A stretch of 64,000 bases of DNA from Rhodosorus marinus CCMP1338 (taxonomy: Eukaryota > Plantae > Rhodophyta), in NCBI GenBank assembly GCA_029953675.1, contig JAMWBK010000013.1:496001-560000 (forward strand), in the 5' to 3' direction. Positions 3,190 through 34,081 of the stretch are shown here, piece by piece; the stretch's first letter is position 1; the number at the start of each line of letters is the position of its first letter. The notes below the pieces were generated by a model. It saw nothing but the letters and a program-made list of their open reading frames with translations. It was not told the DNA's origin and ran no database searches. The translations under genes and the position numbers were made by a program.

Positions 3190-4500
3190 CTTAGTTCCTA
3201 GCTCAAGGTCATGAGGTCCGTTCCTTGCAACTACATCAAAACTCGCTTCGCCCTCCTCCAATTCTCCGCGGTATAATCATAAGTGCGCCGGAAATCCTCG
3301 TACGGCATACATGATATCAGGACGAGTCCTGGTCGCGATGAACATCAGGCATCCGACGAGCTCTCTGTATGGTACGTCCTAGGGCATAGCCGCCGGCTGT
3401 GTAGTCATGCACCTTGACTTCGCAATCGCTGGAGTTTTGACTGGTTTAGAATTTTCCATTTCAAACCTTTTAAGTACCTGCTTGATGTATTTCACTCGGC
3501 TGAGGCTAATCGTCTTGAGCTTCCGATCCTTTACAATCTCTATCCCCAAATAGTAACGGGTCTCGCCCAGATCCTTGATCTCGTACAGCTCCGCAAAATG
3601 CTTCTTTGCCTCTCGGGTCGGCTTTTCCATGATGAGAATATCGTCGACATAAACCAACAACACAACCCCCGTTCTCATGTAAACACGAGGCCCTTCGCCA
3701 GCGCTGGAAACCCCTATTCTGCAGGTATTTTGTAGGCTGATCGTGCCAGGTCCTAGCAGACTGCCTCAGTCCGTATAATGCCTTCCGCAATTCGCACGCA
3801 AATCCCTGTGAACCCCCATATCCGTGTGGCGGTTGCACGTATACATCATCGTGCAATTGGCCATAGAGGTACGCCGTTTCAACATCAAATTGTAGTGCTT
3901 CCCAGTCATAGTCATATTTTGATTGTCTCGAAATTGATCGTTGGCGCGAACACGGCGTCGTACGACTCCTCATCTTGTGCGAACCCTTGCACAACCAATC
4001 ACGCTTTGTACCTCTCTATTCGCCCCGCCGCGTCCTCTGGGATTTTAAACAAACTTTGTTTTTCAACACTTTTGTGTTCGGCGGTCTCCTTACCAGTTCC
4101 CATGTGTTATGCTCATCAAATTGACGACAGCTCGTCATTAATCGCCCTTTGCCACAATTCGCCGTCCGGTCTTGTCAGAGCCTCTTTCACATTCCTAGGT
4201 TCATCCACATTATAACCTGCCAGCTGAATGTTATTCAAGACATCCATTTTTGCGTCCTTCCTGCTTCGAATCGGCCTCGGCATCTTTTCTTGGGGTACTG
4301 CTTCGTTGACTGGTACACCAGTGTCATCAATGACACTAAGATCTTCCATATCAGAGTCGCTAGATAGGTTGTCTAGAACTTCTTCACAACTCTTTTGCAA
4401 ACCGGGTGTAATCGTTGTTATTATACGTTTTCTGTTGCCTTCTTTCTTCCGCAGTAAAGGGGGAACCCATCGGCAACTATGGTAGGCGTTTGGGGAAGAC
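3190..4500 (-). mobile_element. Degenerate Ty1/Copia pol (RT and start of RNase H)
   Basis: EPRNVKEAL...WQRAINDELSSI, QFDVETAYLYG, LRKALYGLRQSARTW, VYVDDILI, YYLGIEI, PYRELVGCLMFIATRTRPDI, split over several frames. Confidence 0.9.
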
Positions 4501-4530
4501 AAAAGGAAAAGTTCGTAAGAGAGTCCGAAG

Positions 4531-5550
4531 ATGATTGTGAGGGAGGTACGCGGGCCGTACCCCGAACCTCTTGTCATTCAGGGCCCGGACCCCTCGGGCA
4601 CCCGGGAAGTTTTGCAAAGGCGCCAGCACCAGTCTAATGGCGACGTGCAGGAGGCACCGACGGAACCACAAGCAGGCGATGTTCAAGCAAGAACGCGGAC
4701 CGAGTCTGCAGCCGCAACCGACCCGGCAGCCACATTCTTGCATCAACTGCGTAGCTTCGACAGATGCTACCAGGACCTGGGCATCGCTGCGTCCGAAATT
4801 ACAGACTTCTACAACGCAGTTTTTCAACTGTACTCGCGAGTCAACAGCTCGCAAGAGCTGCAAGGCGTCCGGTGCACTACGGAGTTGTCCCGGAAACCGG
4901 GTATGTAGGAAGGTGGAGCCGCTACTAGGAATTCTGCACCATATCCGCATGATCTCCCGCGACAGGCCGTAGGCAACCACCTCGCCCCCGAAACCCGTTA
5001 CCGAAACGGTCGACTGCCAGGAAGCTATGACGTCCATGATTTAGGAACCCTGCTCCCTGCGCCCCAGGGAGGGACAGGTGTCCGGGATCTAGGACACTAT
5101 GCGGAGGCATTCCCAGCCATCGGGGAGGGCCCTGCAAGGCCAACCTTCGCCGAGTTTGCAGCTCAGAAAGAACCAGGGAGAGGAGGAGATGCTCGTTCCA
5201 GAACTTCTGGACGCCCCGGACCACAGACCCAGCAGGCTGCCCTGCGGCAACTGCACGCTACGGTCGGGGGTCAGGCTGGGGACCCGATGTTGCTCCAGTC
5301 CTCGCGACGCTACGGAATGTCCGACCCCCAAGGCTGGATGAGGTGGCCCCTGCGGACTTTGCAACGGTTCTTTGCAGAGCACTGGGTATGCCCAGCTCCT
5401 ATGTGGCGCATGTGGACTTTATTGCCTCCCATGCCTGCCTGCTGTGCCATCCAGACGCAATTCCGATTCTCCAAAGTGCCATCTCCCGAGGAGTTTTCCG
5501 GACTGGGATTTTCGGATCCTTCACACAACGACACGCCGATCGACAAGTAA
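4531..5550 (+). pseudogene. Disrupted Cys-rich (RING/PHD-like) coding remnant, probably TE-derived
   Basis: PCGNC...CCSS...EC and, past a TGA in the same frame, PCGLC...LCGACGLYCLPCL. Confidence 0.25.
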
Positions 5551-5558
5551 GCGTTCAC

Positions 5559-7395
5559 ACTGGACTTTACTAGCATAGCCTGAAGCGCTACGCAAGGCGT
5601 GAAGATGAACTAATAACTAGGGAGGGAAGCATGCAACCCCAGGCGCCGATGGCGCGCCTCGGAAAGCATGTCCCTGGAATATCGCCAAATGGAGACACTT
5701 AAACGCCTCAAGAGCGCCAAATGTTCAGTAGGATGCTCAGCAAAACATTTCCGCAACCACTCTAAACCCGACTTATCGACGTGACCAAAGCTTTCCACAA
5801 TGAATGGCTGGAACCGGTGAGAGCGACCCTCAGCGCAAGGCAGACTGGCCATGCTCAGAGCACACCGTCGTTCCTTAACTTTTCGAAGGGCTGAAGCCGC
5901 GGCCCCCCCGGCGGCGGGCGGCTGCGGTGAGGTGGGCGCTGGCCACGGGGCAGGTAATCGCAGGGTCCACATATGTTGAGCGTCTGGCAGCAGCGCCGGA
6001 GACGTGGAGATCGGCTATACAACGGGGCGGTGCAGAGTCCGTTATTGATCTGGGCAGTTCCGACTCAACCTCAACCGTAGGCCCTATCCGAGTCAAAAAT
6101 TCGCTGAGGATGTACTTGAGGCGAGTGTGACGCCTCGTACGGAGACCTCTCAACAGTCCGCAGGAACCCAGGAAGTGGTAGCCACAAGCGTCAATCCGGC
6201 TCTCACATCCCTGACAGAAAGACGGCCGATTAGAGTGCCACGGAGCCTGTGGCAAACCGAGATAGATCCGTGCGGCAGAACGGAACTGGAAAGCATCGAG
6301 ACGATGACTCAATGACGACGGTAGAGTGGTTAACCACAAGTGCGAGAGGTGGCCTCCCATGCCGCGGAGACGAGCGGCAGTGGTAGGCGGCGTGAGAGGA
6401 GAATTGAGCATGACTGTGTGAGCGGCACTGTGTTGGCCCCAGGTGAGGCTATGTTGAATCACATCAGTGCGGGAGCTCCACAATCGGCTCAAACCCGGGT
6501 AGTCTGCAACAGGGGACCCGGGGCTAGCCTCTCCGTCATCGGCAAGAACTCGGTGGAGGGGAGAATACTCAATCGCTTCAGCTCGTCCCCATAACAGCTC
6601 CCTCCAGGAACGAAAGCGGGACCAATTTGCGTCCGGCACGGCGTTGCACCTCCTGAACGCGTGTTGAAGACCATCATAAATTGTCAAAAGCGGGGGCGGC
6701 AGGGTCACTGAATCCTCGTTGGTCAAAGCTCGAGCCAAGAGGCAGGCACTTCGCATCTGGAAGGTCACCAACGTTCGCAGCGCGGTAGCCCAGGAGGCAA
6801 CCGCCGCTGGCGAGCATACCAGCCCACGGTCTGCGACGCCGAATCCCTAATCGCAACGGTAGAGCGATCTGTGCACGAATCAAGTCCCTGTCGGGAGCAG
6901 CTTCAAGATCGAGGGGCTCATCCAAGAGCGTTCCCCAGTGTTGCAGGGTCATCTCGTCGGCTTTAGCCGCGATCCACGAGCCCCAAGCTGGAGGCAGGCT
7001 GCGCAACCAGTAGTTGAGTCTGGGACCGGCACAAAAGCGGGAAAGCAAGCAGGCCGATTGCAGCATGCTGTCGGGTAGGTGCTCAATGGCGTCGGTGAGT
7101 TGCTTGTGCCGTGCCAAAACTCGCTCGCAGGATGCTTGGACAAAGTTGTCAGTCCCCAATCCGACGCCGTGGTGTTCGAACCCTTCACGTTCGCTGATTA
7201 GTCGCAGAGTGGGTGGCAGAGAGGCCAGCGACACGTCCCTCGGGGGGAGAAAGCGACATTTTTCTGTTTCCACAGTCAAACCGACGCGACGTGCAATCGC
7301 TTCGATCTCGGTCAGCCCTCTAGCCAGGGTCTCAGGGGTGCCCAGCAATGTTACGTCATCGTGGTTCACACTGGCCAGGTGTTGGACACAGACAA
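5559..7395 (-). mobile_element. 5'-truncated CRE-clade non-LTR retrotransposon (subfamily A): RT end, thumb, Zn knuckle, restriction-like endonuclease
   Basis: NHDDVTLLG, GPRLNYWLRSLP, IALPLRLG, CQGC...GYHFLGSC...RRHTRL, IADLHV...YVDPAITCP, FQPFIVESFGH; frameshifted over ORFs 6674-7522, 5875-6771, 5610-5972. Confidence 0.9.
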
Positions 7396-10300
7396 CCTTC
7401 TGGGTTACCTCGAACGTCAGACCATCGCTCCCGGGGATATCGCTGCCCAAACGCTGAAGCGGGCCATCGAGCAGCTTATCCGCATTCGTTCGAGGATCCG
7501 CAGGCGACAACTCTCCTTCCACACTCTCGCAGCGCTCTACGAGTATCTGGAGGGACGACTAGAGCTCCTAAAAGCCAGACAACATCCACCTGAGGTACCC
7601 GGGGAGTGCGCGGAACCCCCTGGGCCTGCAGCCGCTTCGAACACAGACCCTGAAGCCTCGTCCCTTCCAGGGGATGTACAGGCAGACCGTGGGACAGTTG
7701 ACGCCCCGGTTGAGACCAGCGCGACTTCCCAAGTACCTGAGAACGCAGCACACGAGGAAAATCCCCATGCGGAGCTCCTCTGCAACCTTCCGGAGCCACC
7801 TCAACAGAAGCGCTCGCGAGTATCCGCCGATAACACCGGATCGGATACTGAGATGACTCCGGCAGCCGTGGATACTCCACAGGATACCACTGTGACACAG
7901 GTTGCCCTTGACGGCAACCATCACGCGATGGACACGCAGGAGAGCCAGGAAAACTCAGCGCAATAATGCCGAGCAGACGCAGGGGAATCAAACGACGCCG
8001 CGACGAGCCTCTGTTCTTCTCGGATCGTCAAGACTGGATCAGACGGTGGAGCGTCTTCGTCGACGACGTCACGGAAGGAGGCAGGCAGTGGACGCGCCTT
8101 ACACACTGCCCGGTTCCCACACGGCGATTTGTGCCACGCAGCCAGGTCCATACGTGGAGCTACCTCTTCCGTGCTGCATTAGAGCTCTCTATGGACAGTA
8201 CCGCACCAACAAACGCCAGCCTGCTTCTTGTCGGACTTCCACGCCTTGTCCTTGGACACTCTGCACTTGATGTTGGCATTCAGGTATCGCACGTGCTTGA
8301 AGGAGAATTCTCTACCGTCTGGAGCGCTCTAGAGGACAAGCGTCTATGCTGTCGCATACTACCGCACGCAAGGAGCTGAAGCGGTTCGACGCCAATATCT
8401 CGGGCGCCACAAGCGAGTGTTGAAACTAGCACACCTTGGCCGCCTTTCAGATGCAGCTCGGAGCCTACAGGCCACCGAAATGGCACCTTGTACCGCGGCT
8501 ACATGGAGACAACTACAAGCGCTCTTTCCCGACCCGGCGGAAGGTGACTTACCAGACGAGATTGCACAAGCCCTGGAATCTTTGCTCGCTCTGAATACCG
8601 AGACACTTAAGCGGCGGTGGGATTCAAGAAACGCGGCCGACGAGGGCCTCATGTCGATCGTGGCACGTCTTCCTCAGGGCAAGAGCCCAGGCCCTAGCGG
8701 TCTCCGAGCGGAAAACCTCCAAGATGCAACTCAACAAACGCAAGTGGCGTTGATTCGTGTATTGCGACAACTGGCGACCGCTCCGGAGAAATTTTTCCCC
8801 GGCTCTGACCCGCGCCCTTCGCAGCAGTCGACTCCTGCCGTTCGCGAAGCCTAACAAGGGTTTAGTGCCGCAGGAACATCCCGGAGTTCGCCCTATCGGA
8901 GTACCAGAAGTTTTGCGCAAGGTAGCAACGCAATGGACTCTTCACGCGGTTATGGACAGGGTGCGTGAGCTCCTGGTGCCCTTACAACTGGGTATTGGAG
9001 TAAGTGGCGGGTGCGAACGCTCACTTCACGCGATCCAGGCCCATTTGTCATGCGAACCCGATTCGGTGGTCCTTCGGCTAGACCTGGAGAATGCCTTTAT
9101 TCGCATCGACCGACGCCTTGCCAAGCAACTGGTGGACGAGCACTTCCCGGAGCTTGCACCAGTGTATAGACTTGGCTATGGAAGCGACAACGCGGACCCA
9201 CCGACGCTCTGTGGCTGGCGATCTTCCCCTGGACAGAACGAAACCGACACCTCTCGCTTGACTCTCCAAGCAGCTACAGGAGTCCAACAGGGAGATCCAC
9301 TGGGGCCGGTGCTACACGCACTATCCCTGGCGCCCTTTCTAAGAGCGTTGCGAGCTAAGTTCCCCAACGAAACGATTGTTGCTATCCACGACGATATCAC
9401 GATTGTCGGGCCGCTACAAGCCTTGAAGGTATCCCTGGCATGGGGAAAAACTGTGCTCCCCTCTCTTGGAGCACGCCTGCAACTCGGCAAGTGCACTGTG
9501 TACGGGCGAACACTGACTACCACGCGAGTGGTCAATCATGAGATTCCTGGAGTTCAAGTGACCAGAGACGGAGTCACCATCCACTCGATACCGATAGGCA
9601 GCCGAGAATATATCGAACAGGAGTGCCGGGGGCTGCAAAATAAGCATGAGAAACTCTTTGAGGAAATTGCCAAGCTCCCACAACCGGAGCTTACGACGCA
9701 AATTGCCCTCTTCAGGTTCTGTGCGGAAACGCGGCTAGACTATGTTCTACGATGCCTCGCATACGAGTTTCGAAGAACTCTGCGGCGCGCGGCCGATGTG
9801 ATGGCCAGATATCATCTGGAAATTCTATTCGGAGGCCTCGCTACGACAGCTGTAGAGGACGACGAGTACGCAGAGCTGATCTCGGACCAAATCGCTCTGC
9901 CTTGCCGCTGGGGGGGGTTGGGTTTCGCTACTCGAAAGCGCGTCCAACCCATCGCGTTTTACTCGTCATGGAGTAACACCTTCCGGAACAATGAAGATGA
10001 ATGGCCATACCTGACTGAACTAGAGCGGGAGGTTTCGGCAGAACGCTCATCAGACACATACGAGCCGACGGAGCAACGATGGTCGACTGCACAGCTGGCG
10101 GACCAGATCTTGAGTGCGGTTGAGATGCAGGTAAACGTTCGACAACTGCTGGGGCTGCCAATTCCGGGATTGCGAACCACCGAGAAGTGCACTAGTTGCC
10201 GGAGTAAACAGGGAAGGACTGGGGTACAACGGTTTCATCACTGCCCAACATCAACTGGACTGTGGCAACGTAGGCACGACGAAATCTGCAGAGAGTTGGC

Positions 10301-10890
10301 ACGGTGGCTGAGGCGATGGAACTTCATGGACGTCGAGCAAGAACCTGAGGGGTACTTCGAGAACTACGGACTGCGACCTGATATCGTTGCTAGGGATCCG
10401 AGGACCAAACAAAGGTATGCGCTGGACGTGACGGTGGTGTCACCATTACTGGGAAAATATTTGCGCCGGAGCAAAGATGATAGCGGATACGCGGCGAGAG
10501 CTGCGGAGAAGTGGAAAATCGCTCACTACAAGGAAGTGATGGTGATCGAGAAACCGGATGACAAGTTCATCCCCATAGCGATAGAGACGTTTGGGCGTAC
10601 GGGGCAAATGGCACAAGAGTTCCTCCGCGACAGCTGCAAACACTTACTGCACAGGAGTGAGGAGCTGAGAGATGTGAGATCGCAGATGAACCGGCAACTA
10701 TGGCGAGGTAATGCAGAGATAGCACTAGGCGCTTTGCGCGTGGACCAGTTGGAGAATCCGCTGGTGCCTGTTTTTTCTTTTGAACGTAGCATGAGACCCC
10801 GGTAGCGGGGTTCCAGTAAGTTTCTCCCTAGATAGGATTAGACGTAGTGTTGCGCTGCAGTAGGCAGCTGCCCAGTAAAGCTTACGGTTA
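7396..10890 (+). mobile_element. Near full-length CRE-clade RT-RLE non-LTR retrotransposon (subfamily B), frameshifted
   Basis: Consecutive ORFs 7361-7966, 7966-8379, 8417-8854, 8757-10805; LPQGKSPGPSGLRAE; the 3' UTR is shared with the copy at 18196-18748. Confidence 0.9.
8757..10805 (+). CDS. Reverse transcriptase plus PD-(D/E)xK restriction-like endonuclease (C-terminal ~680 aa of element B ORF)
   Basis: VRPIGVPEVLRK, QLGIGVSGGCE, LDLENAF, GVQQGDPLGPVL, IHDDI, ALPCRWGGLG, HHCP...RRHDEI, RPDIV...ALDVTVVSP, FIPIAIETFG. Confidence 0.9.
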   Translation: MYCDNWRPLRRNFSPALTRALRSSRLLPFAKPNKGLVPQEHPGVRPIGVPEVLRKVATQWTLHAVMDRVRELLVPLQLGIGVSGGCERSLHAIQAHLSCEPDSVVLRLDLENAFIRIDRRLAKQLVDEHFPELAPVYRLGYGSDNADPPTLCGWRSSPGQNETDTSRLTLQAATGVQQGDPLGPVLHALSLAPFLRALRAKFPNETIVAIHDDITIVGPLQALKVSLAWGKTVLPSLGARLQLGKCTVYGRTLTTTRVVNHEIPGVQVTRDGVTIHSIPIGSREYIEQECRGLQNKHEKLFEEIAKLPQPELTTQIALFRFCAETRLDYVLRCLAYEFRRTLRRAADVMARYHLEILFGGLATTAVEDDEYAELISDQIALPCRWGGLGFATRKRVQPIAFYSSWSNTFRNNEDEWPYLTELEREVSAERSSDTYEPTEQRWSTAQLADQILSAVEMQVNVRQLLGLPIPGLRTTEKCTSCRSKQGRTGVQRFHHCPTSTGLWQRRHDEICRELARWLRRWNFMDVEQEPEGYFENYGLRPDIVARDPRTKQRYALDVTVVSPLLGKYLRRSKDDSGYAARAAEKWKIAHYKEVMVIEKPDDKFIPIAIETFGRTGQMAQEFLRDSCKHLLHRSEELRDVRSQMNRQLWRGNAEIALGALRVDQLENPLVPVFSFERSMRPR

Positions 10891-11280
10891 CATCGCGCAC
10901 AACGAAATCTCGCCCGCTCCCTACGTCTCGAACTTAACATTTCAATAAAATGTATTCCTTGATGACGACATCCAGCTTGTTGCGCTTAGCAGCCGGTACC
11001 CCTATAAGCGCCCTATAGAGACCGCATAGGTGATTCACTGCGGATAATCTCGCATGATGTTTGGACCCTCTAACCACCGATCAATTACCGGAAAATACGA
11101 TAGAATATACCCCAGGTTCACTACTAAATCAGCTTCCTGGATACCCCTCTTGTCGGACGAAAGCTACATCCAAAAATAGAAAAGAATGAAAATCATAAAA
11201 TAATAATAAAATATTATGAAATCTTCGCCTAGCCCCCGTAGCCTCCGCTCTCGAATCAAAACGAAGCTCAATTCCTCGAA

Positions 11281-11613
11281 ACCCCCAAAACTAGGACCAC
11301 GCTGATCGGATTACTCCAAAGCCTGCTACTTATCACACACAACAGGCACAATCTGACTAAAGCACTACTAGGCATCGAAACCATCATAATACTCAGCTAC
11401 AGTATAGCCGCAAGACAAGGATCAGCCAGCAACATGACCGAAGCCACAGGACTAGTGATACTAGCCGTGAGCATAGGCGCCATTGAAGCAGCCATCGGAC
11501 TAGCTATCAGTGCCGCATACAGAAACGTGAGAACCAACCTTAACCTCAGCCTGCAGACTCTACTCATCCCCAAACCCACAAAGATGCCCGATAACCACCC
11601 ACGATCAGAATAA
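11281..11613 (+). CDS. nad4L: NADH dehydrogenase subunit 4L / NuoK-like frame with no in-frame ATG start
   Basis: Hand translation TTLIGLLQSLLLITHNRHNLTKALLGIETIIILSYSIAARQGSASNMTEATGLVILAVSIGAIEAAIGLAISAAYRNVRTNLNLSLQTL aligns without gaps to remembered E. coli NuoK (RRNLLFMLIGLE...ILAISLAAAEASIGLA...RQNLN), with both catalytic Glu kept; TAA at 11611-11613. Confidence 0.8.
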   Translation, partial: TPKTRTTLIGLLQSLLLITHNRHNLTKALLGIETIIILSYSIAARQGSASNMTEATGLVILAVSIGAIEAAIGLAISAAYRNVRTNLNLSLQTLLIPKPTKMPDNHPRSE

Positions 11614-12302
11614 ACCAGTTAGACCTCGCAGAACAACATTAATACAACTAACCGACGGAATACATCTACCACCCCAATACTCGCCGCAGCCAGACTAAGG
11701 ACAACTATGAAAGCGCAGTATCAGACCTAGATAAGCCCCGGAAAGCGCTAAAACAGACAACATCGGACATCAAACACATGAAATAGAAGCTCAGAATCAG
11801 CCAAAAACAGCAATAAACCACTCAGAATCAGCCATAAAAACACGAAATAGGAGCTCAAAAGTCGAAAAAAAGCACGAAGAACAACAAAAATAAGGACTAG
11901 GAATCACGGAAAAATGATAAATTATACTAAATATACCCCCAGGGACACCTCAAACCAGCTCAAAATACACTAATCAGACCAGGCAAAACACGGAAATAAG
12001 ACGGCAAAAAAACACAGAAAAACATGAAACAAACATGAAAGAAGAGATAAAAAACAAGAAAAGTACCGAAGACACTGAAAATAACTACAAGAACAAGAAA
12101 TAAGAGACAAAAAAGATGAGAAAAGGGATAAAAAACAGGAAAACAGACATCAGAAAGCAGAAAAATAAGCAAAAAAGAGCAAAATAAACATCAGAAACAA
12201 GAAAAGAAGAGAAAATACAGAAATAAACATGAATTAGCACCCCGAAAGCACGAAAAACATCAGACGAAATACACAGAAAAGATGAAAAATAAACGCCAGG
12301 TA

Positions 12303-12425
12303 TGGGGTTATGCCCAGGGGGGTCGGATTTTTCGCTGTATAACCCTCTAAACCCCCTGTTTTCGAGGGTTTAACCACTTCTGGCTCGTAAACAGCGAAAA
12401 ACCCGACCCACTTGGCACAAACCTA
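12303..12425. mobile_element. MITE related to the TAGGGTTG hAT-like family
   Basis: Degenerate TIRs tggggttatgcc / ggcacaaaccta; 12345-12425 is similar to the reverse complement of 47698-47785. Confidence 0.6.
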
Positions 12426-13814
12426 CTAGGAACCACCGATAAAGGCCGAAAATAGATAACATCGGACATCAAAAATCAGGTATCTATGAACTAAATCCAA
12501 GCCCGAAGACCAATCAACAGCTAAGTTCAGAAGGGAACCGCCAGCACGTCTACTCAAAATGGTAGTCAGCACGAAAGATCAGAAATCAGCACCAGAGAAG
12601 CCAATCTCCGGAAAACTCAATAAGAGAGACAACGTCCAGGACTGAAAAAGGCTCGAAAAACAAGATCAGGGACAAAAAAGACTAGGGGCAAAATAACAAA
12701 ACAACAAGCCCGACAGGATCTAAGCACTGAAGACAGTAAAACCTCAACACCCGCATGGAGGTTAAGACTGCAACGACAAGAAGTCAATAAGCAGTATGAG
12801 AACCACGTATCAGCGAACAAGGAAAATCAGCTACAACATGGGACCAGTACTGAAAACCGGACACCAGGACTTCACAAAAAGGCAGAAACCAGACAAAGAA
12901 GCACCAACTCAACCACCTTCGGCAGCTGGACTTGAGATCAACAGGGAAGAGCGAAATCAATTCAACCTGGATCCCAGATAACCGCCAGTCACCCTCGATC
13001 ACCAGGGAGACCGAAGTCAATCCGACTGGATCACGATACCAGCTCAACAAGACCGAAGAGAGTGAAAATAGGCAAAATAACAAGATAATCACTACTGAAA
13101 AGGATCTCAAAGACAGAACTCAAACCGAACTAACAGCCTGGACACCCGTAAGAGATCTCAGCGGAACTATTCCGGAGACTCTTCAACTCAAAGCATGAAA
13201 GCCAACCCCACCACTACTCAGCTAGACCACCTGCGGAACAGTACTGAACAAGTCTCCAAATACAGCCTAAGTACCAACCTCAGCCCCCGAAATACAGGCC
13301 ATCTCAATCCGAAGCCCAGCAGCTCAAGGACAAAGGCGGCCTTTTTGCGTGAACCAGTACCAAAGACCATCTGCCCCACTAGGAATATTCCAGACCTCCA
13401 GCAGAACATCTATACTCAGACTAGGGACCAAATTACAAGAACATACAGAGATAGCAAGCAGCCTGCCACTCTACACAGTACTGAACGAGCTCTCATAGGC
13501 ATGAACTAAACCAGACCAGTTAACCTAGGGAAAGCTCTCTATGCCCCTGGACTCCTCAAAGAAATAACCAGGTAGCCACAAACTCAACCAAGCAGCCTAA
13601 AAACCAGCCCTCCTCTTCCTCATCAAAACACGATCTGGATCGGGACGGCTTTTGCGCGACCTACAACAGCAAATACAAGCCGCTATCAACTTTTTGAGTA
13701 GGGGATCAGTACTAAATACTCCTCTCATAGCTCCTAAAACCACAAATCTAATCAACCAGCCACTATCTTCAGTAGGCCACAGCCACTAGCCACTATCTTC
13801 AGTAGGCTATCACC

Positions 13815-13984
13815 GGGCGGTGCCCCTAGCACTAACTCCCCGAGTAACGTGTCAACGCTAGGGACCAACCAAATGAACCTCTCCAGCCTCCCTCCACTGT
13901 AGAGGGCGGTGCCCCTAGCACTAACTCCTCGAGTAACATCTCAACGCTAGGGACCAACCAAATGAACCTCTCCAGCCTCCCTCC
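13815..13984. repeat. 81-bp near-identical direct repeat (13815-13895, 13904-13984)
   Basis: gggcggtgcccctagcactaactcc...gaacctctccagcctccctcc occurs twice. Confidence 0.9.
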
Positions 13985-14854
13985 TCCGCAATCCAATCTC
14001 ACAAGCAGCATGAACATTCTCCTGAACCACAAAACAGCCTCTGCAGCGTATATACCCAGCTAAACCCATTTTTGCCCCCTTTTCGCCTTTTTCGACCAAA
14101 TCTAGTAGGGAACAGAAGCTGAAATCAAAGAAATACAAGAAATACCCAATACTCCCAAATAATGCGAAAACGGCGTATATAGCGCAATCAAAGAAATCCA
14201 TAAACCAGCCAACCTTGCGAAGCAAACTCCCAAGCAACCACCCACCTCAGCCCCAGATCCTTGGCCTGGCACCCCTCAAAGCTCGACATAGAGTCCTAGG
14301 GAAGCAGATACCCCTCCAGCCACCCTCAAATCAGGCAATCTCGCGTTGATACCGAAAAAAAGGTGCAGAGGCCGTTTTTGGGGGGGGTCGAAGGTGTACT
14401 GAGTGTTTTAGAACGGGCAGAGCTCCGTGAAGAAACAAGGTGCGGCTCACCTAGTTGATGACCAAAGCTCAGGTTCATAGAGCTCTATCATAGTCTGGAA
14501 AACGGTTCATGCTATACAGGCTAAAACAAGGAGACATGGCGTACTGCTGGAAAAAAAAAAAGAGCCCGGGCCCCATTTAGTTTTTCTCGCGAACTTGTGG
14601 ATGTGAAAGGTAAAGAAGTTTGTCGGTTACCCGCGAGATACACGGATGAATTCAAGCTCTAGAATGGCTTCCCTCGGTCCGACTGTGGCCCTGCCACCAG
14701 CACCAGAAAATAAGTCGAACTAGTCACTCCGTCTCGGCGGCCAACCAGAACACCACTCCATCCCCCCTCCCCCAAAAAGAGGACAAATCACACATCCCCA
14801 CCACCTCAATTATGAATGGCGGTTTTACTATGAATAGGATAAGGAACGACGGAA

Positions 14855-18065: not shown

Positions 18066-18195
18066 GCGTTTTGTAAGTCTCAATCCTTTTTCCTTTCTAT
18101 ATCTACTCTCAGCTACCAGTACTAAGAGTTAGGCTTTTATCCCGCGTCCATTTGTCGCTAATAATCCCAACAGCGCGACGACTGGGTTACGTTGT

Positions 18196-18748
18196 AACCG
18201 TAAGCTTTACTGGGCAGCTGCCTACTGCAGCGTAACAGTACTTCTATCGCTGTCTAGGGGAATACTTACTCGAACCCCGCTACCGGGGTCTCATGCTACG
18301 TTCTAAAGCAAACCGGACCAGTTGGAGAATCCACTGGTACAGGCACCAGTGGATTCTCCAACTGGTCCACGCGCAAAGCGCCTAGCTCTATCTCCGCATT
18401 ACCTCGCCAAAGTTGCTGGTTTATCTGCGATCTTATATCGCTCAGTTCTAGGCTCCGGTGCAACAAATGCTTGCAAATGTCCCGCAGAAACTCCTGTGCC
18501 ATCGGTCCAGTCCGCCCAAATGTTTCTATTGCAATTGGGATGAACTTGTCATCCGGGTGTTCTATCGTCATCGCCTCCTTGAGTGTGCTTTCTTCCACCT
18601 CTCTGCACATCTTGCTGCATATCCACTCTCCCCCTCACTACGCCTCAGATACTTCCCTTGCAGAGGAGACACGACCGTCACGTCCAGCGCATACCGTTGA
18701 AATGTCCTCGGATGCGGAGCAATGATGTTGCTCAGTTGTAAAGCTTAC
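18196..18748 (-). mobile_element. 5'-truncated CRE-like subfamily B copy with 11-bp TSD
   Basis: FIPIAIETFGRTG...LWRGNAEI matches element B; ggttacgttgt at 18185-18195 and 18749-18759. Confidence 0.85.
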
Positions 18749-20511: not shown

Positions 20512-22299
20512 CTCACCATCGGCCCTTTCCCACTAGGGGGATCTAATGTCCATACCGAGTCCCTTCTGCAAAATGACGAACCTATCTTTGGTAAGTCGCT
20601 TGGTAAATACATCCGCAAGCTTTTCCTCCGTTGGAAGATACCTCAATTATACCTCTCCACTTGTGCAACGGTACCTTGCATAATGGAGTTTCACAGACAC
20701 GTGCCGCGACATCCGGCTGTCGTTTGTTACCGACCACCTAATACAGGAATTGTTGTCAGAATAGTCTGGGGTTACGTTAGTCTGGGGTTACGTTTGCGTC
20801 TCGACTTCGCGTCCCAGCTCCTCAAGAAATTCTTGAGGCCAGCGTTGTAATGTGAGCATGTCGCCACGTGCTTGATATTCTGCTTCCGTCGTCGATTGTG
20901 CGATTGAGCGCTGCCTCCACGACCTGTACAGCACGGTTGATCTGTTCAGTAGCATACCGCTAGTGCTCCTTCGATCGACATTGTCGTCAGCCCAAGTTGA
21001 GTCAGAATACCCTGTCACCTGGTATTTTGTGCCGTTCACACCCTCTTCACCCAACCGCAGTACTAGATCCCTTGTACCTTGGAGATACTTGACAAGTTTT
21101 TCTCGCTTTTTCATAGTCTCCGAGCCTGAAGTTTGTCATTCTTGCGCATTGTCCCATGGCATTGGCTATGCCGGGTCGCGTTCTGGTGCTGAGGAATAAG
21201 AGCGACCCGACAAGTTCTTGAAAAGGTGCTTGCATCATCTCGGTGACTTCTTCCGTAACGGATTTAGACGTCATGATGATTGGAGTGGATAGGGGCTTGC
21301 ATCCTAACATTGCATACGTAGTGACGATGTCTTTGACGTATCTTGTCTGCCCGAGGTAGATTTCGCGTCTCCTTTGGTCTCGTTGTATTTGGACGCCGAG
21401 GAATTCATCTACCTTACCCAGCATCTTAACCCGGTACAGCGCCTGTAGTGTTTCCTTGGCTTTCCGCACGTCGCTCACGTTTCCAATGATCAACATATCA
21501 TACACGTGAACTGCAAGGATGAGCGTTCCCCGCTTGAAAACGCAGCTGTCCGTTCTCAAGGTGTCGACCCCGTGTGCTCTAGGTCGGCGTTCAGTTGCTC
21601 GTGCCAGACCCTCCCCTACTGCTTCAAACCGTAGAGGCTTTTCTTCAGTTTTCATATCTTATCAGCGTTTCCTGCTTATTCTAGCCCTTTCGACTGACAC
21701 AGGAAAAGTTCTTCCTCCAGTGTACCGTTCAGGTAGGCTGTAGTGACATCTGCCTCTTCCACTTCAAGATCTTCAGTCGCCGCTACACTCAGTCATACTC
21801 TGACACTAGAGAAGCCAACTGTGGGCGAAAATGTTTCATCGTAGTCGACGCCTTCTCTTTACGTAAATCGTCGCGTGACAATTCTTGCTTTGAATTTTGT
21901 CACCGCTCCATAACAACCGGTTCTCACTGGAAACACTATCTTTGAGCTCAGGATTCTTCGTCCGTTGGGCACTTTGTCTTTTGAGATAAATTGCGACGTT
22001 CCCTTTTCTCTCAGGGAGCCAATTTCTTCTGCGGCTGCTCTCTTCCACTCTTCCGTGTATGGACCTCCGTTTGCTTCCGCCAATGCCGTTGGCTCCGGTA
22101 CGTCGTACATGGAATCACCCTTTTGGAACAAGTTCTGGGTTATGGTGTTTTCTTGCTGTTGTGCCCTCTCTGGTTCCTTCGTTGATTCGGGCCATTCGTT
22201 GTCAGGCTTGCGGATCTTCTGAGCCTTCGGAGGACGTTACTCTTCCTGTATGCTCCAATTTCGCGTATGTATGAACTTGTCTTTCGTTGGCAAACATAC

Positions 22300-24144: not shown

Positions 24145-24210
24145 CTGCGACTATGAATGTATGAATCGTAGCTTGCGACTATGTTTGAATCGCGCGGAAG
24201 ACTATATTAG

Positions 24211-24264
24211 TAGGGTTGTGCCAAGCGGGTTTTTCGCTGTTTACGACGCACTGGAACAACCCTA
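24211..24264. mobile_element. 54-bp mini-MITE with TAGGGTTGT/ACAACCCTA TIRs
   Basis: Perfect 9-bp TIR flanked by direct repeats atattag (24204-24210, 24265-24271). Confidence 0.75.
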
Positions 24265-25683: not shown

Positions 25684-26466
25684 ATGTCGTCGCTCATTAA
25701 GATCCAGGCCCCACAACCGAAAGCCTACGACGGGCGACGCGACGCCTTGCTCATCACTACGTTCCTGAACAGCCTGAGAACTTATTTCAAATTAGCGAGG
25801 CTTCCCGACGACGATGACGAATACAAAATTACCCTGGCAGAAGGGTATTTGACGGGTGATGCTTCGTACTGGTGGTCCTTAATTGGGGACGACCAGCGGC
25901 CGACAACCTACGCGGACTTTGAATCTACGTTGAAGGCGCAATTTTACCCCGCCGACGCTACGATACGAGCAAAACAACAACTTGCGCACGAGAAGCAGAA
26001 AACCACTGTGGCCGCTTACTCAGGGTATTTTAACAAGTGCCTCATTCAAGTCGGTGCGATTTCAGACTCGGAGAAATTCGACCGGTTCGTTGAAGGGCTA
26101 AAGCCTGAAATAAGGAAATATATCTATATTCAGGATATTTCCACATTCGAGGGAGCCCAGGCTCTCGCCCTAAAAGTCGAAGGAGCTGACCACGCGAGTC
26201 AGGGGCTTCGACGGGATCCCCAAGACCAGCGACACCGTAAACCAGAGAGCCAGACAAAACCGATACCACGAGGAACAAGATCCGGCCGTTCGTACCAACC
26301 CCAAACCCAGGAGTTACGCAACGGGAAATATGTCAACGTCATTTGCAATTTCTGGGGCAAGAAAGGACATACCCAAAGAATCTGCTGGAAAAACCCGGAT
26401 CGGGACCCAACTGTGTCAAAATCGGCACCCCCTTCGTTGTCAGAGTTAAAAGAGGAGCAGCAGTAG
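25684..26466 (+). CDS. Ty3/Gypsy Gag with a degenerate CCHC knuckle; C-terminus ends in the hairpin loop
   Basis: PQPKAYDG, YLTGDASYWW, YADFESTLKAQF, RFVEGLKPEI, CNFWGKKGHTQRIC. Confidence 0.85.
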   Translation: MSSLIKIQAPQPKAYDGRRDALLITTFLNSLRTYFKLARLPDDDDEYKITLAEGYLTGDASYWWSLIGDDQRPTTYADFESTLKAQFYPADATIRAKQQLAHEKQKTTVAAYSGYFNKCLIQVGAISDSEKFDRFVEGLKPEIRKYIYIQDISTFEGAQALALKVEGADHASQGLRRDPQDQRHRKPESQTKPIPRGTRSGRSYQPQTQELRNGKYVNVICNFWGKKGHTQRICWKNPDRDPTVSKSAPPSLSELKEEQQ

Positions 26467-27067
26467 GAGGTGTCGATACTGACACAGTTGGGTCCTGATC
26501 CGGGCCTTTCCAACAGATTCTTTGGGTGTCCTTTCTTGCCCCAGAAATTGCAAATGACGTTGACATATTTCCCGTTGCGTAGCTCCTGGGTTTGGGGTTG
26601 GTACGAACGGCCGGATCTTGTTCCTCGTGGTATCGGTTTTGTCTGGCTCTCTGGTTTACGGTGTCGCTGGTCTTGGGGATCCCGTCGAAGCCCCTGACTC
26701 GCGTGGTCAGCTCCTTCGACTTTTAGGGCGAGAGCCTGGGCTCCCTCGAATGTGGAAATATCCTGAATATAGATATATTTCCTTATTTCAGGCTTTAGCC
26801 CTTCAACGAACCGGTCGAATTTCTCCGAGTCTGAAATCGCACCGACTTGAATGAGGCACTTGTTAAAATACCCTGAGTAAGCGGCCACAGTGGTTTTCTG
26901 CTTCGCGTGCGCAAGTTGTTGTTTTGCTCGTATCGTAGCGTCGGCGGGGTAAAATTGCGCCTTCAACGTAGATTCAAAGTCCGCGTAGGTTGTCGGCCGC
27001 TGGTCGTCCCCAATTAAGGACCACCAGTACGAAGCATCACCCGTCAAATACCCTTCTGCCAGGGTAA
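25829..27067. repeat. Long inverted repeat: arms 25829-26418 and 26480-27067, ~61-bp spacer
   Basis: Mirror ORFs in the ORF track are identical (26042-26278 minus = 26618-26854 plus); a few differences, mostly near the loop. Confidence 0.95.
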
Positions 27068-32017: not shown

Positions 32018-34081
32018 ATGGATGTCGCACGCAATATGAAAGCGGTTGGAGTGCTTCTGGTGGTGTTGACGGCCCTTATTCGAGGTGCTCTCAGTCAGAG
32101 GCTTTACTATGTTAACGTAAGGGCTGACTTCGGGACTACGCTTAACACTGGTGGTGTGGAAACCTTCTCAAGGAGACAGTTTGTCAATGGCCACGGAACA
32201 TTTAAGCCAGATTTGGATGTTGTTCCTCAGAAGCTGCTGGATTATTTGACCACTGATCTCCAAGTATCCTTCAGTAGGTCTTCCAGAGGCCCATTCAAGG
32301 GAACATCACTTCCCCCTACCACATCACTGTCCAAGGTGCGGACGGATGGGAGAAAGAATCTGAGTATAAAGGACGATTACCGACTCAGGTTTGTAAGCGA
32401 GCAGCGGGTTGTCACGGATGATCCCAAGACGATCCCAGAAATTACCAAAAACGAACAAACAGAGTCCAGAGCTATCACCTACGCAGGATTCTTCTTTAAG
32501 TACTTCTACAACAATGAGTTTGTCCCCCCGAAATATTACGAGTGTTTCAATGAGCCAATGGGCAAAGCCCAGGCACTGAAGAAGAAGGGCGAGAGTCAGA
32601 CAGAATTTATTGAAAGAATCTCCAGACTATGCACGAGACTCTGCAGAGAGGTGCGAAAGCACGTGCCTGAGACACGGACGGGTGGTCCAGCGAATGAGTT
32701 TGTTCGCCCTTCCTTCAATGACTTCGAAATGTTCAAGAACAGGATAAAGATATGGATGGACACCTCTGCGAGGGGAGGATGCCAAAGATTCGTATCCGAG
32801 CACGTCTATAACATCGGAGGCTCCTATGCTGAGGCCAATCTAGACCTTATTGGAACCTACACATCATGGTTGAACGATGGGGGAAAGCCAGATAAGTACC
32901 TCGTCAGCGAGATGGGACAGTATGTGGCCAGCTGGTACAACCGCAATAGGGGGTTTGCAGCTCGCCCCCTGTCCTCAAGGAACTTTTCGATAATCAACGA
33001 GGCTCTTAAAGTGTTGATGATGTTGATGAGGGTACCTGACAACGTCCTCCAGGTGATAACCTTTATTAATTTGGAAACCCAAGAACAAAGGGACATCAGG
33101 AATGGCAGACCCTATCCATGGAGCATGATTAACGAGAAGCAAGATGGCTCCGTAGAGTTTACAGACCTTGTGAAGTACTTCGAGCTTCTCAAGGGGTTCG
33201 ATGGAAATTTCGTCTACTCCAGCTCCGACGACATTCAGCTTAGCGTCAACGCACTCGCAACGAGGCAGAGGGGCTTTATCATCATGCAAAACCTATCTGG
33301 GAAACCAGCTCGCGTCAAATTTAACTTTCCCCACGGAATGGATAAGCTGAAGAGATGGACCCGTCGGCGTCTCCGAATCAGTGACGAGAAGCCCACAAAC
33401 GAGGAGAAGAGGCAGAACATTCTGGTGGGTGGAAACTTGATGTGGAAGATTGCTGGGAAACGGGCCAAGGCGGGGGGGACACTTACGCTTCCTGACACCA
33501 TTCGCCTGGACCAGTACGAGACGACGGTATTTCAGGTAACTTTTGACAAAGATTCGCGAGACCTGAGGTCTGTAAAACGATCACGGCACTTCGCGAAATC
33601 TGTTGAAAACAGCAGGAACTTGAAACCTGACTTCCCTGCACCAATCGAAAAGGACCAGAAGGTACACTACTTCTTCGACGACCTCCCAACATCATCACGA
33701 GGCGTTGTCGCGATTCGCATTGCTCATTCTCGACCACTCGGCAAAGTGGACAAGCCGAAGGTCTGGATTAACAATGTCCTGGTTCCATCTGAGTCCTTCA
33801 GTGCCGACGTAGCAGGAGGTTACAGAAAGTTTTCCGACGGAAGCTACTACGGTGTTTTCATAGTCTACTACGACCTCGAGGACTTTACGAAGGGAAAGCG
33901 TGCAAAGGTTTCTGTGTCCTACCCTGACAACGGCGGATGGTCTGTTTCAGTAGTCCTAGAGGTCGATCAATGCAGCGGTTCATCTTGCTGCGTGTTGGGT
34001 CATAGGAAGAATAGTCGAGCGTGCAAACCAAACAATGATAATGGAAATCGGAGGCCAATGCCAACACCTGTGCCGACGTAG
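32018..34081 (+). CDS. Secreted GH86-like beta-porphyranase/beta-agarase (clan GH-A), intronless
   Basis: Signal peptide; acid/base motif YECFNEP, nucleophile VSEMG; co-linear with remembered Bacteroides plebeius porphyranase BpGH86A (EPLNEP, ISEFG, SSNPDIQV, KPVVKING, FSDGGGHVSSMIL vs YPDNGGWSVSVVL). Confidence 0.82.
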   Translation: MDVARNMKAVGVLLVVLTALIRGALSQRLYYVNVRADFGTTLNTGGVETFSRRQFVNGHGTFKPDLDVVPQKLLDYLTTDLQVSFSRSSRGPFKGTSLPPTTSLSKVRTDGRKNLSIKDDYRLRFVSEQRVVTDDPKTIPEITKNEQTESRAITYAGFFFKYFYNNEFVPPKYYECFNEPMGKAQALKKKGESQTEFIERISRLCTRLCREVRKHVPETRTGGPANEFVRPSFNDFEMFKNRIKIWMDTSARGGCQRFVSEHVYNIGGSYAEANLDLIGTYTSWLNDGGKPDKYLVSEMGQYVASWYNRNRGFAARPLSSRNFSIINEALKVLMMLMRVPDNVLQVITFINLETQEQRDIRNGRPYPWSMINEKQDGSVEFTDLVKYFELLKGFDGNFVYSSSDDIQLSVNALATRQRGFIIMQNLSGKPARVKFNFPHGMDKLKRWTRRRLRISDEKPTNEEKRQNILVGGNLMWKIAGKRAKAGGTLTLPDTIRLDQYETTVFQVTFDKDSRDLRSVKRSRHFAKSVENSRNLKPDFPAPIEKDQKVHYFFDDLPTSSRGVVAIRIAHSRPLGKVDKPKVWINNVLVPSESFSADVAGGYRKFSDGSYYGVFIVYYDLEDFTKGKRAKVSVSYPDNGGWSVSVVLEVDQCSGSSCCVLGHRKNSRACKPNNDNGNRRPMPTPVPT

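What the first reader, a model, noticed from the sequence alone, without database searches (positions are those of the whole stretch)
11281..11613. Hidden, highly diverged nad4L/NuoK gene in a 3.4-kb strand-skewed block: possible nuclear copy of a mitochondrial minicircle
Seen: an open frame missed by the ORF track because it has no ATG start. It aligns without gaps to NuoK/Nad4L with both proton-pumping glutamates. Third positions are A/C-rich (cta, ata, aca, gcc), unlike the nuclear genes here. It is the only gene I can find in ~3 kb of skewed, repeat-bearing non-coding DNA. Established: Stylonematophyceae red algae are reported to have fragmented minicircular mitogenomes with one or two very diverged genes per circle plus a long non-coding or constant region. 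Inference: this is a whole or partial nad4L minicircle captured in the nucleus, or an early stage of endosymbiotic gene transfer. An out-of-frame ATG at 11216 is one indel away from opening the frame.
Basis: partly seen in the sequence, partly recalled or inferred. Interest (0 to 1): 0.8.

Follow-up and report, generated by a model that had tools for sequence, protein, structure and literature searches.

The report
Nuclear copy of mitochondrial nad4L minicircle
A 3.3-kb piece of one of the red alga Rhodosorus marinus's tiny circular mitochondrial chromosomes, carrying a now-dead copy of the respiratory gene nad4L, sits in a transposon-rich stretch of a nuclear chromosome; it is real, but such insertions were already reported as abundant in this genome.

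Summary
Window 11299-11613 (+) is a 104-codon frame, 80-85% identical to Rhodosorus nad4L proteins. One of these is named NADH dehydrogenase subunit 4L by UniProt. A family profile hits only NuoK/ND4L chains in the PDB. It aligns without gaps to E. coli NuoK, and both glutamates (E36, E72) are kept.

The frame lies in the only mitochondrion-like stretch of the 64-kb window, 11064-14334 (+), with AT skew +0.43 and GC skew -0.23. The non-coding DNA downstream is colinear with a related nad4L contig as far as 13251. Two published primers for the non-coding region of R. marinus minicircles find near-matches at the two ends of the block.

The window is contig JAMWBK010000013.1 of the R. marinus CCMP1338 nuclear assembly. 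The copy is decaying. The start ATG is now ACG. Its unique changes are 10 non-synonymous to 2 synonymous. A dispersed nuclear repeat sits inside it, and it differs from this strain's own minicircle at the four published primer sites.

It is therefore a NUMT, probably a near-whole linearised minicircle, and not a gene transfer in progress or a mis-join. Lee et al. 2023 already reported abundant NUMTs in this assembly. Interest is low.

The parts
11064..14334 (+). Whole mitochondrion-derived block (NUMT). It is A/C-rich on the + strand, with AT skew +0.43, GC skew -0.23 and GC 0.45.
   Evidence: It is the only maximal segment of a 3-mer likelihood model trained on L001-L004 against the window background (268 bits). 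Its skews match those of the four nad4L contigs. The borders are compositional, good to a few tens of bases.
11117..11136 (-). Near-match to the non-coding-region walking primer rmar_pw_R1 of R. marinus minicircles. It contains the motif CACTACTAAA at 11119-11128.
   Evidence: 4 mismatches in 20, with the first 13 nt exact. A hit at <=3 mismatches together with a second at <=4 occurred in 0 of 1000 local shuffles. This is the only copy of the motif in the 64-kb window. The motif occurs 6 times in L003 and once each in L001 and L004.
11299..11613 (+). nad4L pseudogene: 104 codons plus TAA. The former start ATG is now ACG (11299-11301). The conserved glutamates lie at 11377-11379 and 11485-11487.
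   Evidence: 80-85% protein identity to four Rhodosorus nad4L proteins. DNA identity is 88% to L002. Alignment; PDB profile hits; 10 N: 2 S unique changes.
11614..11772 (+). Non-coding DNA just 3' of the gene, colinear with the related nad4L contig L002.
   Evidence: Short colinear matches: L002 351-365 <-> 11674-11688 and 370-415 <-> 11727-11772.
11773..12305 (+). Very A-rich stretch (A up to 64%) of degenerate 21-60-nt repeats, with no counterpart in L002.
   Evidence: Composition; repeat families D1, D2, D4 and D6; TRF arrays; gap in the colinear L002 matches.
12306..12428 (.). Unskewed hairpin island, a member of a dispersed nuclear repeat. It was probably inserted after the mitochondrial DNA arrived.
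   Evidence: Its composition is nuclear-like. The DNA fold is -34.2 kcal/mol, z=-6.2. Positions 12343-12425 are 85.5% identical to 47698-47780 (-), and 12385-12428 match 24208-24246 (-).
12514..13251 (+). Non-coding DNA colinear with L002 downstream of its nad4L, at 70-84% identity.
   Evidence: HSPs 446-470 <-> 12514-12538, 474-535 <-> 12590-12650, 576-649 <-> 12735-12806 and 660-1017 <-> 12863-13251.
13755..13984 (+). Tandem repeats in the non-coding part: a 23-nt unit repeated 30 nt apart (13755-13807), and an 89-nt unit at 1.9 copies, 96% identical (13815-13984).
   Evidence: The paper states that nearly all minicircle constant regions contain tandem repeats (PMC10250338).
14031..14050 (+). 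Near-match to the non-coding-region walking primer rmar_pw_F2, on the gene strand.
   Evidence: 3 mismatches in 20. A hit this good for any of the three pw primers occurred in 1 of 1000 local shuffles.
8757..10897 (+). Context only: 3' part of a non-LTR retrotransposon (reverse transcriptase plus a C-terminal restriction-like endonuclease motif). It ends about 170 bp before the block.
   Evidence: RVT_1 E=1.7e-8. A second, inverted partial copy lies at 18190-18726, and the shared homology stops at about 10895. LINE/CRE elements make up 9% of this genome (paper supplement).

Best explanation
The block 11064-14334 is a NUMT, a piece of mitochondrial DNA integrated into a nuclear chromosome of Rhodosorus marinus CCMP1338. 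It derives from the nad4L minicircle of the fragmented mitogenome. It most likely represents a near-whole circle that was opened within its shared non-coding (constant) region and joined into a chromosomal break in a transposon-rich region. That origin and that joining step are inferred.

Since arriving it has evolved without constraint. The nad4L start codon mutated from ATG to ACG. Amino-acid-changing substitutions accumulated at sites that are conserved in mitochondrial copies. A short nuclear repeat inserted into it. An A-rich repeat tract either expanded here or was lost in the compared relative.

The strand skew is simply inherited from the minicircles, whose coding strand is A/C-rich in both coding and non-coding DNA. 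The locus has no function. The working nad4L is the one on the minicircle.
For: **Shown**
1. Homology of the frame to Rhodosorus nad4L: 80-85% aa and 80-88% nt.
2. Family identity as NuoK/ND4L:
   - all 23 PDB hits are that subunit, and both glutamates are in register;
   - a distant hit of the family profile, P0130, itself passes the Pfam PF00420 gathering score at 43.1 bits.
3. Non-coding colinearity with L002 as far as 13251.
4. Same skew and composition as four independent nad4L contigs, and the only such segment in the window.
5. The window is JAMWBK010000013.1 of GCA_029953675.1. The block lies about 507 kb into a 1.107-Mb contig, and the offset is exactly 496,000. The paper names this accession as the nuclear assembly.
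6. The same strain has a separate nad4L minicircle with published primers. The block differs from them at 2/20 and 5/20 positions in the gene, and at 3/20 and 4/20 in the non-coding region.
7. Decay:
   - ATG is now ACG;
   - unique changes are 10 N: 2 S against 20:28 in the others (Fisher two-sided p=0.021);
   - differences from L002 by codon position are 7:9:17, against 4-7 at position 2 and 28-41 at position 3 for mitochondrial pairs.
8. A nuclear dispersed repeat lies inside the block.
9. The surroundings are transposon-rich: a LINE, a copia-type RT and a gypsy gag.

**Inferred**
- The near-whole-circle reading. It rests on primer-like sites at both ends, in the expected orientations, and on a size of 3.3 kb against the published 2-6 kb.
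- Joining at a chromosomal break, taken from general knowledge of NUMT formation as cited in the paper.
Against: - I could not obtain the deposited R. marinus minicircle sequences. Comparison with the strain's own mitochondrial DNA therefore rests on 80 nt of primer sequence.
- No reads were available to confirm the two junctions or the copy number.
- The frame is still open over 104 codons with no indel. This is not unlikely by chance, but it does not by itself prove decay.
- The codon-position test against L002 alone is only suggestive (one-sided p=0.087).
- The 170 bp between the retrotransposon end and the block (10898-11063) is unassigned.
- A search with translated non-coding ORFs of the block found no relatives, so the constant-region assignment of 13252-14334 is weakly supported.
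Confidence: 0.9

Rival explanations
1. Endosymbiotic gene transfer in progress. The nuclear copy is, or is becoming, a working nuclear nad4L, expressed through an upstream exon or a non-ATG start and imported into mitochondria.
For: The frame is uninterrupted for 104 codons, and both functionally important glutamates are kept. R. marinus nuclear genes have about three introns each, so an upstream exon cannot be excluded from sequence alone.
Against: - The start codon is lost, and a stop lies 19 codons upstream in frame.
- Unique changes are 10 N: 2 S. They hit sites invariant in the four mitochondrial copies and lower the hydrophobicity of helices 1 and 2.
- Third-position usage is still mitochondrial. 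The paper finds that transferred genes adopt nuclear GC3.
- The strain keeps a high-copy nad4L minicircle.
- An open frame is expected by chance.
- The paper's own search found no transferred non-ribosomal gene except sdhB.
Confidence: 0.03
2. Assembly artefact. A minicircle read or a chimeric long read was joined into the nuclear contig, and no such insertion exists in the chromosome.
For: Minicircles outnumber nuclear DNA by more than 100-fold. The assembly is Nanopore-based, so chimeric reads are conceivable. I could not inspect reads.
Against: - The block is not the present-day minicircle. It mismatches all four same-strain primer sites (14 of 80 nt) and has lost the start codon.
- It contains a repeat found elsewhere in nuclear DNA.
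- It is flanked on both sides by nuclear sequence, about 507 kb inside a 1.1-Mb contig.
Confidence: 0.03
3. RNA-mediated capture. The neighbouring non-LTR retrotransposon's reverse transcriptase copied a long minicircle transcript and the element's RNA in one event, giving element then mitochondrial sequence in the same orientation. This concerns how the NUMT formed, not whether it is one.
For: - The block starts about 170 bp after the element's 3' end and is in the same orientation.
- Minicircle non-coding DNA is transcribed: L001 is a 2.1-kb transcript with nad4L plus flanks.
Against: - There is no poly(A) tract at the 3' end of the block.
- No target-site duplication or split repeat was found around the composite.
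- LINE/CRE elements cover 9% of the genome and the region is transposon-rich, so adjacency by chance is plausible.
- The second copy of the element has no such appendage.
Confidence: 0.07
4. Chance. The frame is an accidental open frame in compositionally biased DNA that happens to look like a small membrane protein.
For: The single-sequence Pfam and NCBIfam scores are below the curated cut-offs. Long open frames are common on the T-poor strand.
Against: E=1.6e-40 to 1.1e-31 against four Rhodosorus nad4L proteins in a database of 5.8 billion sequences. DNA identity is 88% over 322 nt. T at codon position 2 has p about 1e-6.
Confidence: 0

Closest known systems
NUMTs of Rhodosorus marinus reported by Lee et al. 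2023 (Nat Commun 14:3363, PMC10250338)
   Same: - Same genome assembly (GCA_029953675.1).
- Same kind of object: minicircle-derived DNA in nuclear chromosomes.
- Their screen (BLASTn of complete mitogenomes against the nuclear assembly, E<1e-4) should detect this locus.
- They also propose that small, high-copy circles favour incorporation by end joining.
   Different: The paper gives only totals and length distributions. This locus is not described individually in the text or in the supplements held here. New at this level of detail are its near-minicircle size, the retained but dead nad4L, the nuclear repeat inside it and its position next to a LINE.
The nad4L minicircle of R. marinus CCMP1338 (mitogenome accessions OK643888-OK643898, ON716284, OP146131)
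   Same: - One small gene plus long non-coding DNA with tandem repeats.
- A/C-rich gene strand.
- The CDS length is about the same: 103 codons in the paper's table against 105 here.
- GC1/GC2/GC3 are 52/43/56 in the paper against 52/43/52 here.
   Different: - Linear and chromosomal rather than circular.
- Start codon lost.
- About 17% mismatch at the four primer sites.
- Interrupted by a nuclear repeat.
- I could not align it to the deposited circle.
NuoK / ND4L subunit of respiratory complex I (Pfam PF00420; E. coli NuoK, PDB 3rko chain K)
   Same: About 100 residues and three hydrophobic segments. It aligns without gaps, and the two membrane glutamates (E36, E72 in E. coli numbering; my knowledge of the literature) are kept.
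   Different: The Rhodosorus family is extremely diverged. Only five proteins among 1.84 billion representatives reach E<=0.001. The window copy carries further damaging substitutions.
Nuclear genes of mitochondrial origin in R. marinus (sdhB and nine ribosomal protein genes; Lee et al. 2023)
   Same: Mitochondrial ancestry and nuclear location.
   Different: Those genes have start codons, nuclear-type GC3 and normal conservation. This copy has none of these.

Membership tests
Nad4L/NuoK (PF00420) | Significant match to the family profile | tested here: inconclusive
   The window sequence alone scores 20.8 bits, E=3.3e-4, below the gathering score of 26.1. Four of the five family members match PF00420 (E<=0.1), best E 4.7e-4, which is below the gathering score. 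Support comes through an intermediate: the family profile finds P0130 (E=7.9e-5 in 1.84 billion proteins), which scores 43.1 bits on PF00420.
Nad4L/NuoK (PF00420) | Two conserved membrane glutamates in helices 2 and 3 (E. coli E36 and E72) | tested here: met
   The ungapped profile alignment to 3rko_K has offset +9. E27 and E63 of the window frame fall on E36 and E72.
Nad4L/NuoK (PF00420) | About 100 residues with three transmembrane helices | tested here: met
   The frame has 104 codons. Hydropathy shows three hydrophobic segments in the homologue P0001. The first two are weakened in the window copy by its unique substitutions. This is a crude hydropathy scan only, not a dedicated predictor.
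Nad4L/NuoK (PF00420) | Close orthologues annotated as nad4L in the same lineage | tested here: met
   P0002 is UniRef A0A7S2ZDJ3, 'NADH dehydrogenase subunit 4L, Rhodosorus marinus', at 81% identity.
NUMT (nuclear copy of mitochondrial DNA) | Sequence homology to the lineage's mitochondrial DNA, including non-coding DNA | tested here: met
   The gene is 80-88% identical to four contigs. Non-coding DNA is colinear with L002 as far as 13251. Near-matches to two same-strain non-coding primers were found.
NUMT (nuclear copy of mitochondrial DNA) | Embedded in nuclear chromosomal sequence on both sides | tested here: met
   The window is JAMWBK010000013.1:496001-560000 of the nuclear assembly. A LINE lies on the left. 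Dispersed repeats and nuclear genes (MatE, WD40, tRNA-Asp) lie on the right.
NUMT (nuclear copy of mitochondrial DNA) | Junctions and single-copy depth confirmed by reads | not testable with these tools
   No read data can be mapped here. Indirect support comes from divergence from the same-strain minicircle primers and from a nuclear repeat inside the block.
NUMT (nuclear copy of mitochondrial DNA) | Evolves free of the constraint seen in mitochondrial copies | tested here: met
   The start codon is lost. Unique changes are 10 N: 2 S against 20:28, Fisher p=0.021.
Stylonematophyceae minicircle architecture (gene cassette plus constant region) | One or two genes only | tested here: met
   nad4L is the only detectable gene in the block.
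Stylonematophyceae minicircle architecture (gene cassette plus constant region) | Non-coding region shared with the other minicircles of the species, containing tandem repeats | tested here: inconclusive
   Tandem repeats are present. Two of the three published primer-walking primers, which I take to lie in the minicircles' non-coding region, find near-matches at the block's two ends; the third does not. No other minicircle sequence of this strain was available for comparison.
Functional nuclear gene of mitochondrial origin (EGT) | Usable start codon and intact gene structure | tested here: not met
   ATG is now ACG at 11299-11301, and an in-frame stop lies 19 codons upstream.
Functional nuclear gene of mitochondrial origin (EGT) | Purifying selection and nuclear-type codon usage | tested here: not met
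Functional nuclear gene of mitochondrial origin (EGT) | Transcription and import | not testable with these tools
   No gene with the products of three ORFs of the block (59, 104 and 108 aa) is on record in any assembly of the collection. This is weak negative evidence only.

The most novel reading that the evidence does not exclude
The block is a near-complete 'fossil' of an older nad4L minicircle, with cassette and constant region frozen in the nucleus. It may have been captured as RNA by the adjoining non-LTR retrotransposon rather than as DNA. If so, it would preserve an earlier state of the fast-evolving constant region. It would also be a documented case of retrotransposon-mediated transfer of organelle sequence in a red alga.
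Probability: 0.07. Interest if true: 0.5.

Novelty: already known. Interest (0 to 1): 0.2.

Why it matters
It matters little beyond annotation. The locus should be labelled as a NUMT carrying a nad4L pseudogene, not as a gene. It should also be kept in mind when mapping reads or designing nad4L primers and probes for R. marinus.

It adds a concrete, dissected example to the published statement that minicircle-derived NUMTs are abundant in this genome:
- a block of about minicircle size, with gene and non-coding DNA;
- later hit by a nuclear repeat;
- lying among transposons.

Two further uses are possible:
- Aligned to the deposited minicircles, it could give a rough clock for how fast the constant region and the gene diverge.
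- The shared strand skew and the recurring CACTACTAAA motif in non-coding DNA of several Rhodosorus strains are small leads on minicircle replication or transcription.

Tried and rejected
1. I looked for same-species minicircle DNA through proteins. A 3046-residue concatenate of all open segments of at least 30 aa from the non-coding parts of the block found nothing at E<=10.
2. Two scans of the JGI metagenome collection, one with the protein alignment and one with a conserved 26-nt pattern, found nothing.
3. Exact look-ups of three ORFs of the block (59, 104 and 108 aa), aimed at independent assemblies or transcripts, found nothing on record.
4. The SRA run numbers of the homologous contigs appear in no paper of the library.
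5. I tested whether the homologous contigs close into circles. No terminal repeats were found.
6. I looked for a second gene or an RNA gene in the block. No Pfam hit below E=0.09 and no Rfam hit at E<=1. There was no further codon periodicity.
7. I looked for a target-site duplication, or a repeat split by the insertion, around the LINE plus block. I found only a tangle of a roughly 370-bp dispersed repeat, with no clean empty site.
8. Short matches of L004 and L001 to the block outside the gene (20-24 nt) were dismissed as evidence of circular permutation, because their order is inconsistent. The one at 11117-11130 turned out to be the recurring motif.
9. I first considered the block to be the 3' UTR of the upstream retrotransposon. 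I rejected this because the second copy's homology ends at about 10895 and because of the mitochondrial homology.

Full report
**What is in the sequence.** It has no in-frame ATG before 11434. T makes up 5%, 32% and 10% of codon positions 1, 2 and 3. This periodicity reaches p about 1e-6 in 240-nt windows and is found nowhere else between 10900 and 14400. Third positions are A 0.38 and C 0.40, unlike the nuclear ORFs of the window.

The frame lies in a strongly skewed stretch. I trained a 3-mer likelihood model on the four homologous contigs found later and scored it against the window background. It returns one segment in the whole window, 11064-14334 on the + strand (268 bits), and none on the - strand. 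An open frame in itself means little here. The T-poor strand has several stop-free segments of 100-150 codons. A neutrally evolving copy would stay open with P=0.42-0.75.

**What the frame is.** On its own it scores PF00420 at E=3.3e-4 (20.8 bits, below the gathering score of 26.1). It gives weak NuoK hits in NCBIfam.

A search of 5.8 billion proteins returned four relatives at 80-85% identity, with E from 1.6e-40 to 1.1e-31. One is UniRef A0A7S2ZDJ3, 'NADH dehydrogenase subunit 4L, Rhodosorus marinus'.

A profile of the five sequences hits 23 PDB chains at E<1, and every one is NuoK, ND4L or NdhE. The best is E. coli NuoK, with an ungapped alignment at offset +9. The glutamates at 11377-11379 and 11485-11487 therefore fall on E36 and E72.

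Against 1.84 billion representatives the profile finds only five proteins at E<=0.001. The family is very diverged. One of the distant hits (P0130) itself passes the Pfam threshold for PF00420 at 43.1 bits. Nad4L identity is therefore secure.

**Where the window comes from.** The window's MatE ORF is 92% identical to R. marinus transcriptome proteins. It is 100% identical to a protein on NCBI contig JAMWBK010000013.1 of GCA_029953675.1. The contig is 1,106,935 bp and the coordinate offset is exactly 496,000.

Lee et al. 2023 (PMC10250338) give this accession as their nuclear assembly of R. marinus CCMP1338. That paper reports the following:
- The mitogenome consists of 13 minicircles of about 2-6 kb.
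- Each minicircle has one or two genes in a gene-specific cassette, plus a constant non-coding region with tandem repeats.
- One of the minicircles is a nad4L circle, with published primers.
- Minicircles are present at 100-fold or more the nuclear copy number.
- NUMTs are abundant in this nuclear genome. They were found by BLASTn of the mitogenome against the assembly.

**Evidence that the whole block is mitochondrial in origin, not only the gene.**
- All four homologous contigs (L001-L004) share the block's skew. Their AT skew is +0.22 to +0.42 and their GC skew -0.24 to -0.39. The block has +0.43 and -0.23.
- The closest contig, L002, is 88% identical over the gene and colinear further downstream: 351-415 with 11674-11772, 446-535 with 12514-12650, 576-649 with 12735-12806, and 660-1017 with 12863-13251.
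- The paper lists three primer-walking primers for hetero-concatemer PCR products, which I take to lie in the minicircles' non-coding region. Two have near-matches in the block:
  - rmar_pw_F2 at 14031-14050 on the gene strand, with 3 mismatches;
  - rmar_pw_R1 on the opposite strand at 11117-11136, with 4 mismatches and 13 nt exact.
- In 1000 locally shuffled versions of the block, a hit at 3 mismatches or fewer occurred once. The combination never occurred.
- The forward site lies near the right end and the reverse site near the left end. On a circle they would face each other across the block's two ends.
- With a size of 3.3 kb, this suggests a near-whole circle opened in its non-coding region. 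I regard this as likely but not shown.
- No other gene or RNA is detectable in the block.

**Evidence that it is a decaying nuclear copy.** The homologues start with ATG where the window has ACG at 11299-11301.

I counted changes at sites invariant in the other four sequences. The window lineage has 12 unique changes, 10 of them non-synonymous and 6 at codon position 2. The four mitochondrial lineages together have 20 non-synonymous and 28 synonymous (Fisher two-sided p=0.021). Several of these changes lower the hydrophobicity of the first two helices.

The block mismatches the same strain's nad4L primers at 2/20 and 5/20 positions. It is therefore not the current minicircle.

An unskewed island at 12306-12428 folds into a strong hairpin (z=-6.2). 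It is about 85% identical to sequences at 47698-47780 and 24208-24246. I read it as a dispersed nuclear repeat that inserted after the transfer. A conserved minicircle element that has also been scattered as small NUMTs is a less likely alternative.

The 11773-12305 tract of A-rich degenerate repeats has no counterpart in L002. It either expanded here or was lost there.

**Surroundings.** An ORF with a reverse transcriptase domain and a C-terminal restriction-like endonuclease motif ends at 10805. Homology with a second, inverted copy at 18190-18726 stops at about 10895.

Such LINE/CRE elements make up 9% of the genome. A copia-type RT, a palindromic pair of gypsy gag fragments and a roughly 370-bp dispersed repeat lie nearby. 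The NUMT thus sits in a transposon-rich region.

The block's position 170 bp after the LINE, in the same orientation, raises the idea of RNA-mediated capture. There is no poly(A), no target-site duplication and no second example, so I give it about 7%.

**Rivals.**
- A working transferred gene is disfavoured. The start is lost, selection is relaxed, codon usage is mitochondrial, and the minicircle copy persists.
- A mis-join is disfavoured. The block diverges from the strain's own minicircle, carries a nuclear repeat inside it, and lies deep within a 1.1-Mb contig. Read-level proof is still missing.
- A chance frame is excluded.

**Verdict.** The object is a NUMT carrying a nad4L pseudogene, probably a near-whole linearised minicircle. 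The kind of object, in this very assembly, was published in 2023, although this locus is not described individually there. It is ordinary for this genome and useful mainly for annotation.

Noticed in passing
window 11119-11128; L003 486, 590, 756, 921, 1005, 1291; L001 923; L004 421: The 10-mer CACTACTAAA recurs on the gene strand in the non-coding DNA of nad4L contigs from several Rhodosorus strains, six times in L003. It also lies in the site of the published primer rmar_pw_R1. Its only occurrence in the 64-kb window is inside the block. The flanks are not conserved. It may be a transcription, processing or replication signal of the minicircles.
   Followed up: partly
L001-L004 and window 11064-14334: Minicircle-derived DNA of Rhodosorus has a strong, uniform strand asymmetry in coding and non-coding parts alike: AT skew +0.2 to +0.4 and GC skew -0.24 to -0.39. 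The word 'skew' does not occur in the main text of the 2023 minicircle paper. This hints at a one-directional replication or transcription bias.
   Followed up: partly
window 12306-12428, 47698-47780 (-), 24208-24246 (-): A short dispersed nuclear repeat. The copy in the block forms a roughly 120-nt hairpin with 28-nt arms and looks like a miniature inverted-repeat element. The other two copies share only its right half and end at the same ...GGCACAACCCTACTA terminus.
   Followed up: partly
window 25829-26369 and 26527-27067: A 541-bp inverted repeat that is 100% complementary, with a 157-nt spacer that is itself partly palindromic. Both arms encode a Ty3/gypsy gag fragment. A perfect palindrome in a Nanopore-based assembly could be real, or it could be a fold-back read artefact.
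   Followed up: partly
window 8757-10897 (+) and 18190-18726 (-): Two copies, 72-89% identical, of the 3' end of a non-LTR retrotransposon with an RT domain and a CCHC plus PD-(D/E)xK-like endonuclease motif. This is consistent with the LINE/CRE class that makes up 9% of this genome. The high-GC stretch from about 4500 to 10900 may be the whole element.
   Followed up: partly
window 32018-34081 (+): A 687-aa ORF with two porphyranase accessory domains (PF18206 at E=2.9e-7; PF18040 at E=4.2e-4, below its cut-off). These domains are usually seen in bacterial enzymes that degrade red-algal cell walls. It could be a horizontally acquired gene or an endogenous wall-remodelling enzyme.
   Followed up: no
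window 38618-40183 (+): An intron-less MatE transporter ORF. Apart from three closer hits at 53-92% identity (two from MMETSP algal transcriptomes), its best relatives that carry a source name are all bacterial (about 35-39% identity, e.g. Persicimonas and Austwickia). It may be of bacterial origin.
   Followed up: no
window 13336-13350, 13643-13660, 14068-14098: Three small T-rich islands in the otherwise T-poor block. Two share the motif GGC-N-GC(C)TTTTGCG-N-GA(A)CC. They may be conserved non-coding signals of the minicircle.
   Followed up: no
window 63165-63326 and 49614-49707: Two perfect tandem duplications: 81 nt x2 and 47 nt x2, each 100% identical.
   Followed up: no
window 21047-21655 (-), 51224-52015 (+), 44097-44169 (+): A copia-type RT fragment (RVT_2), a lactonase-like beta-propeller ORF (PF10282, E=1.1e-41) and a tRNA-Asp(GTC) gene.
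   Followed up: no
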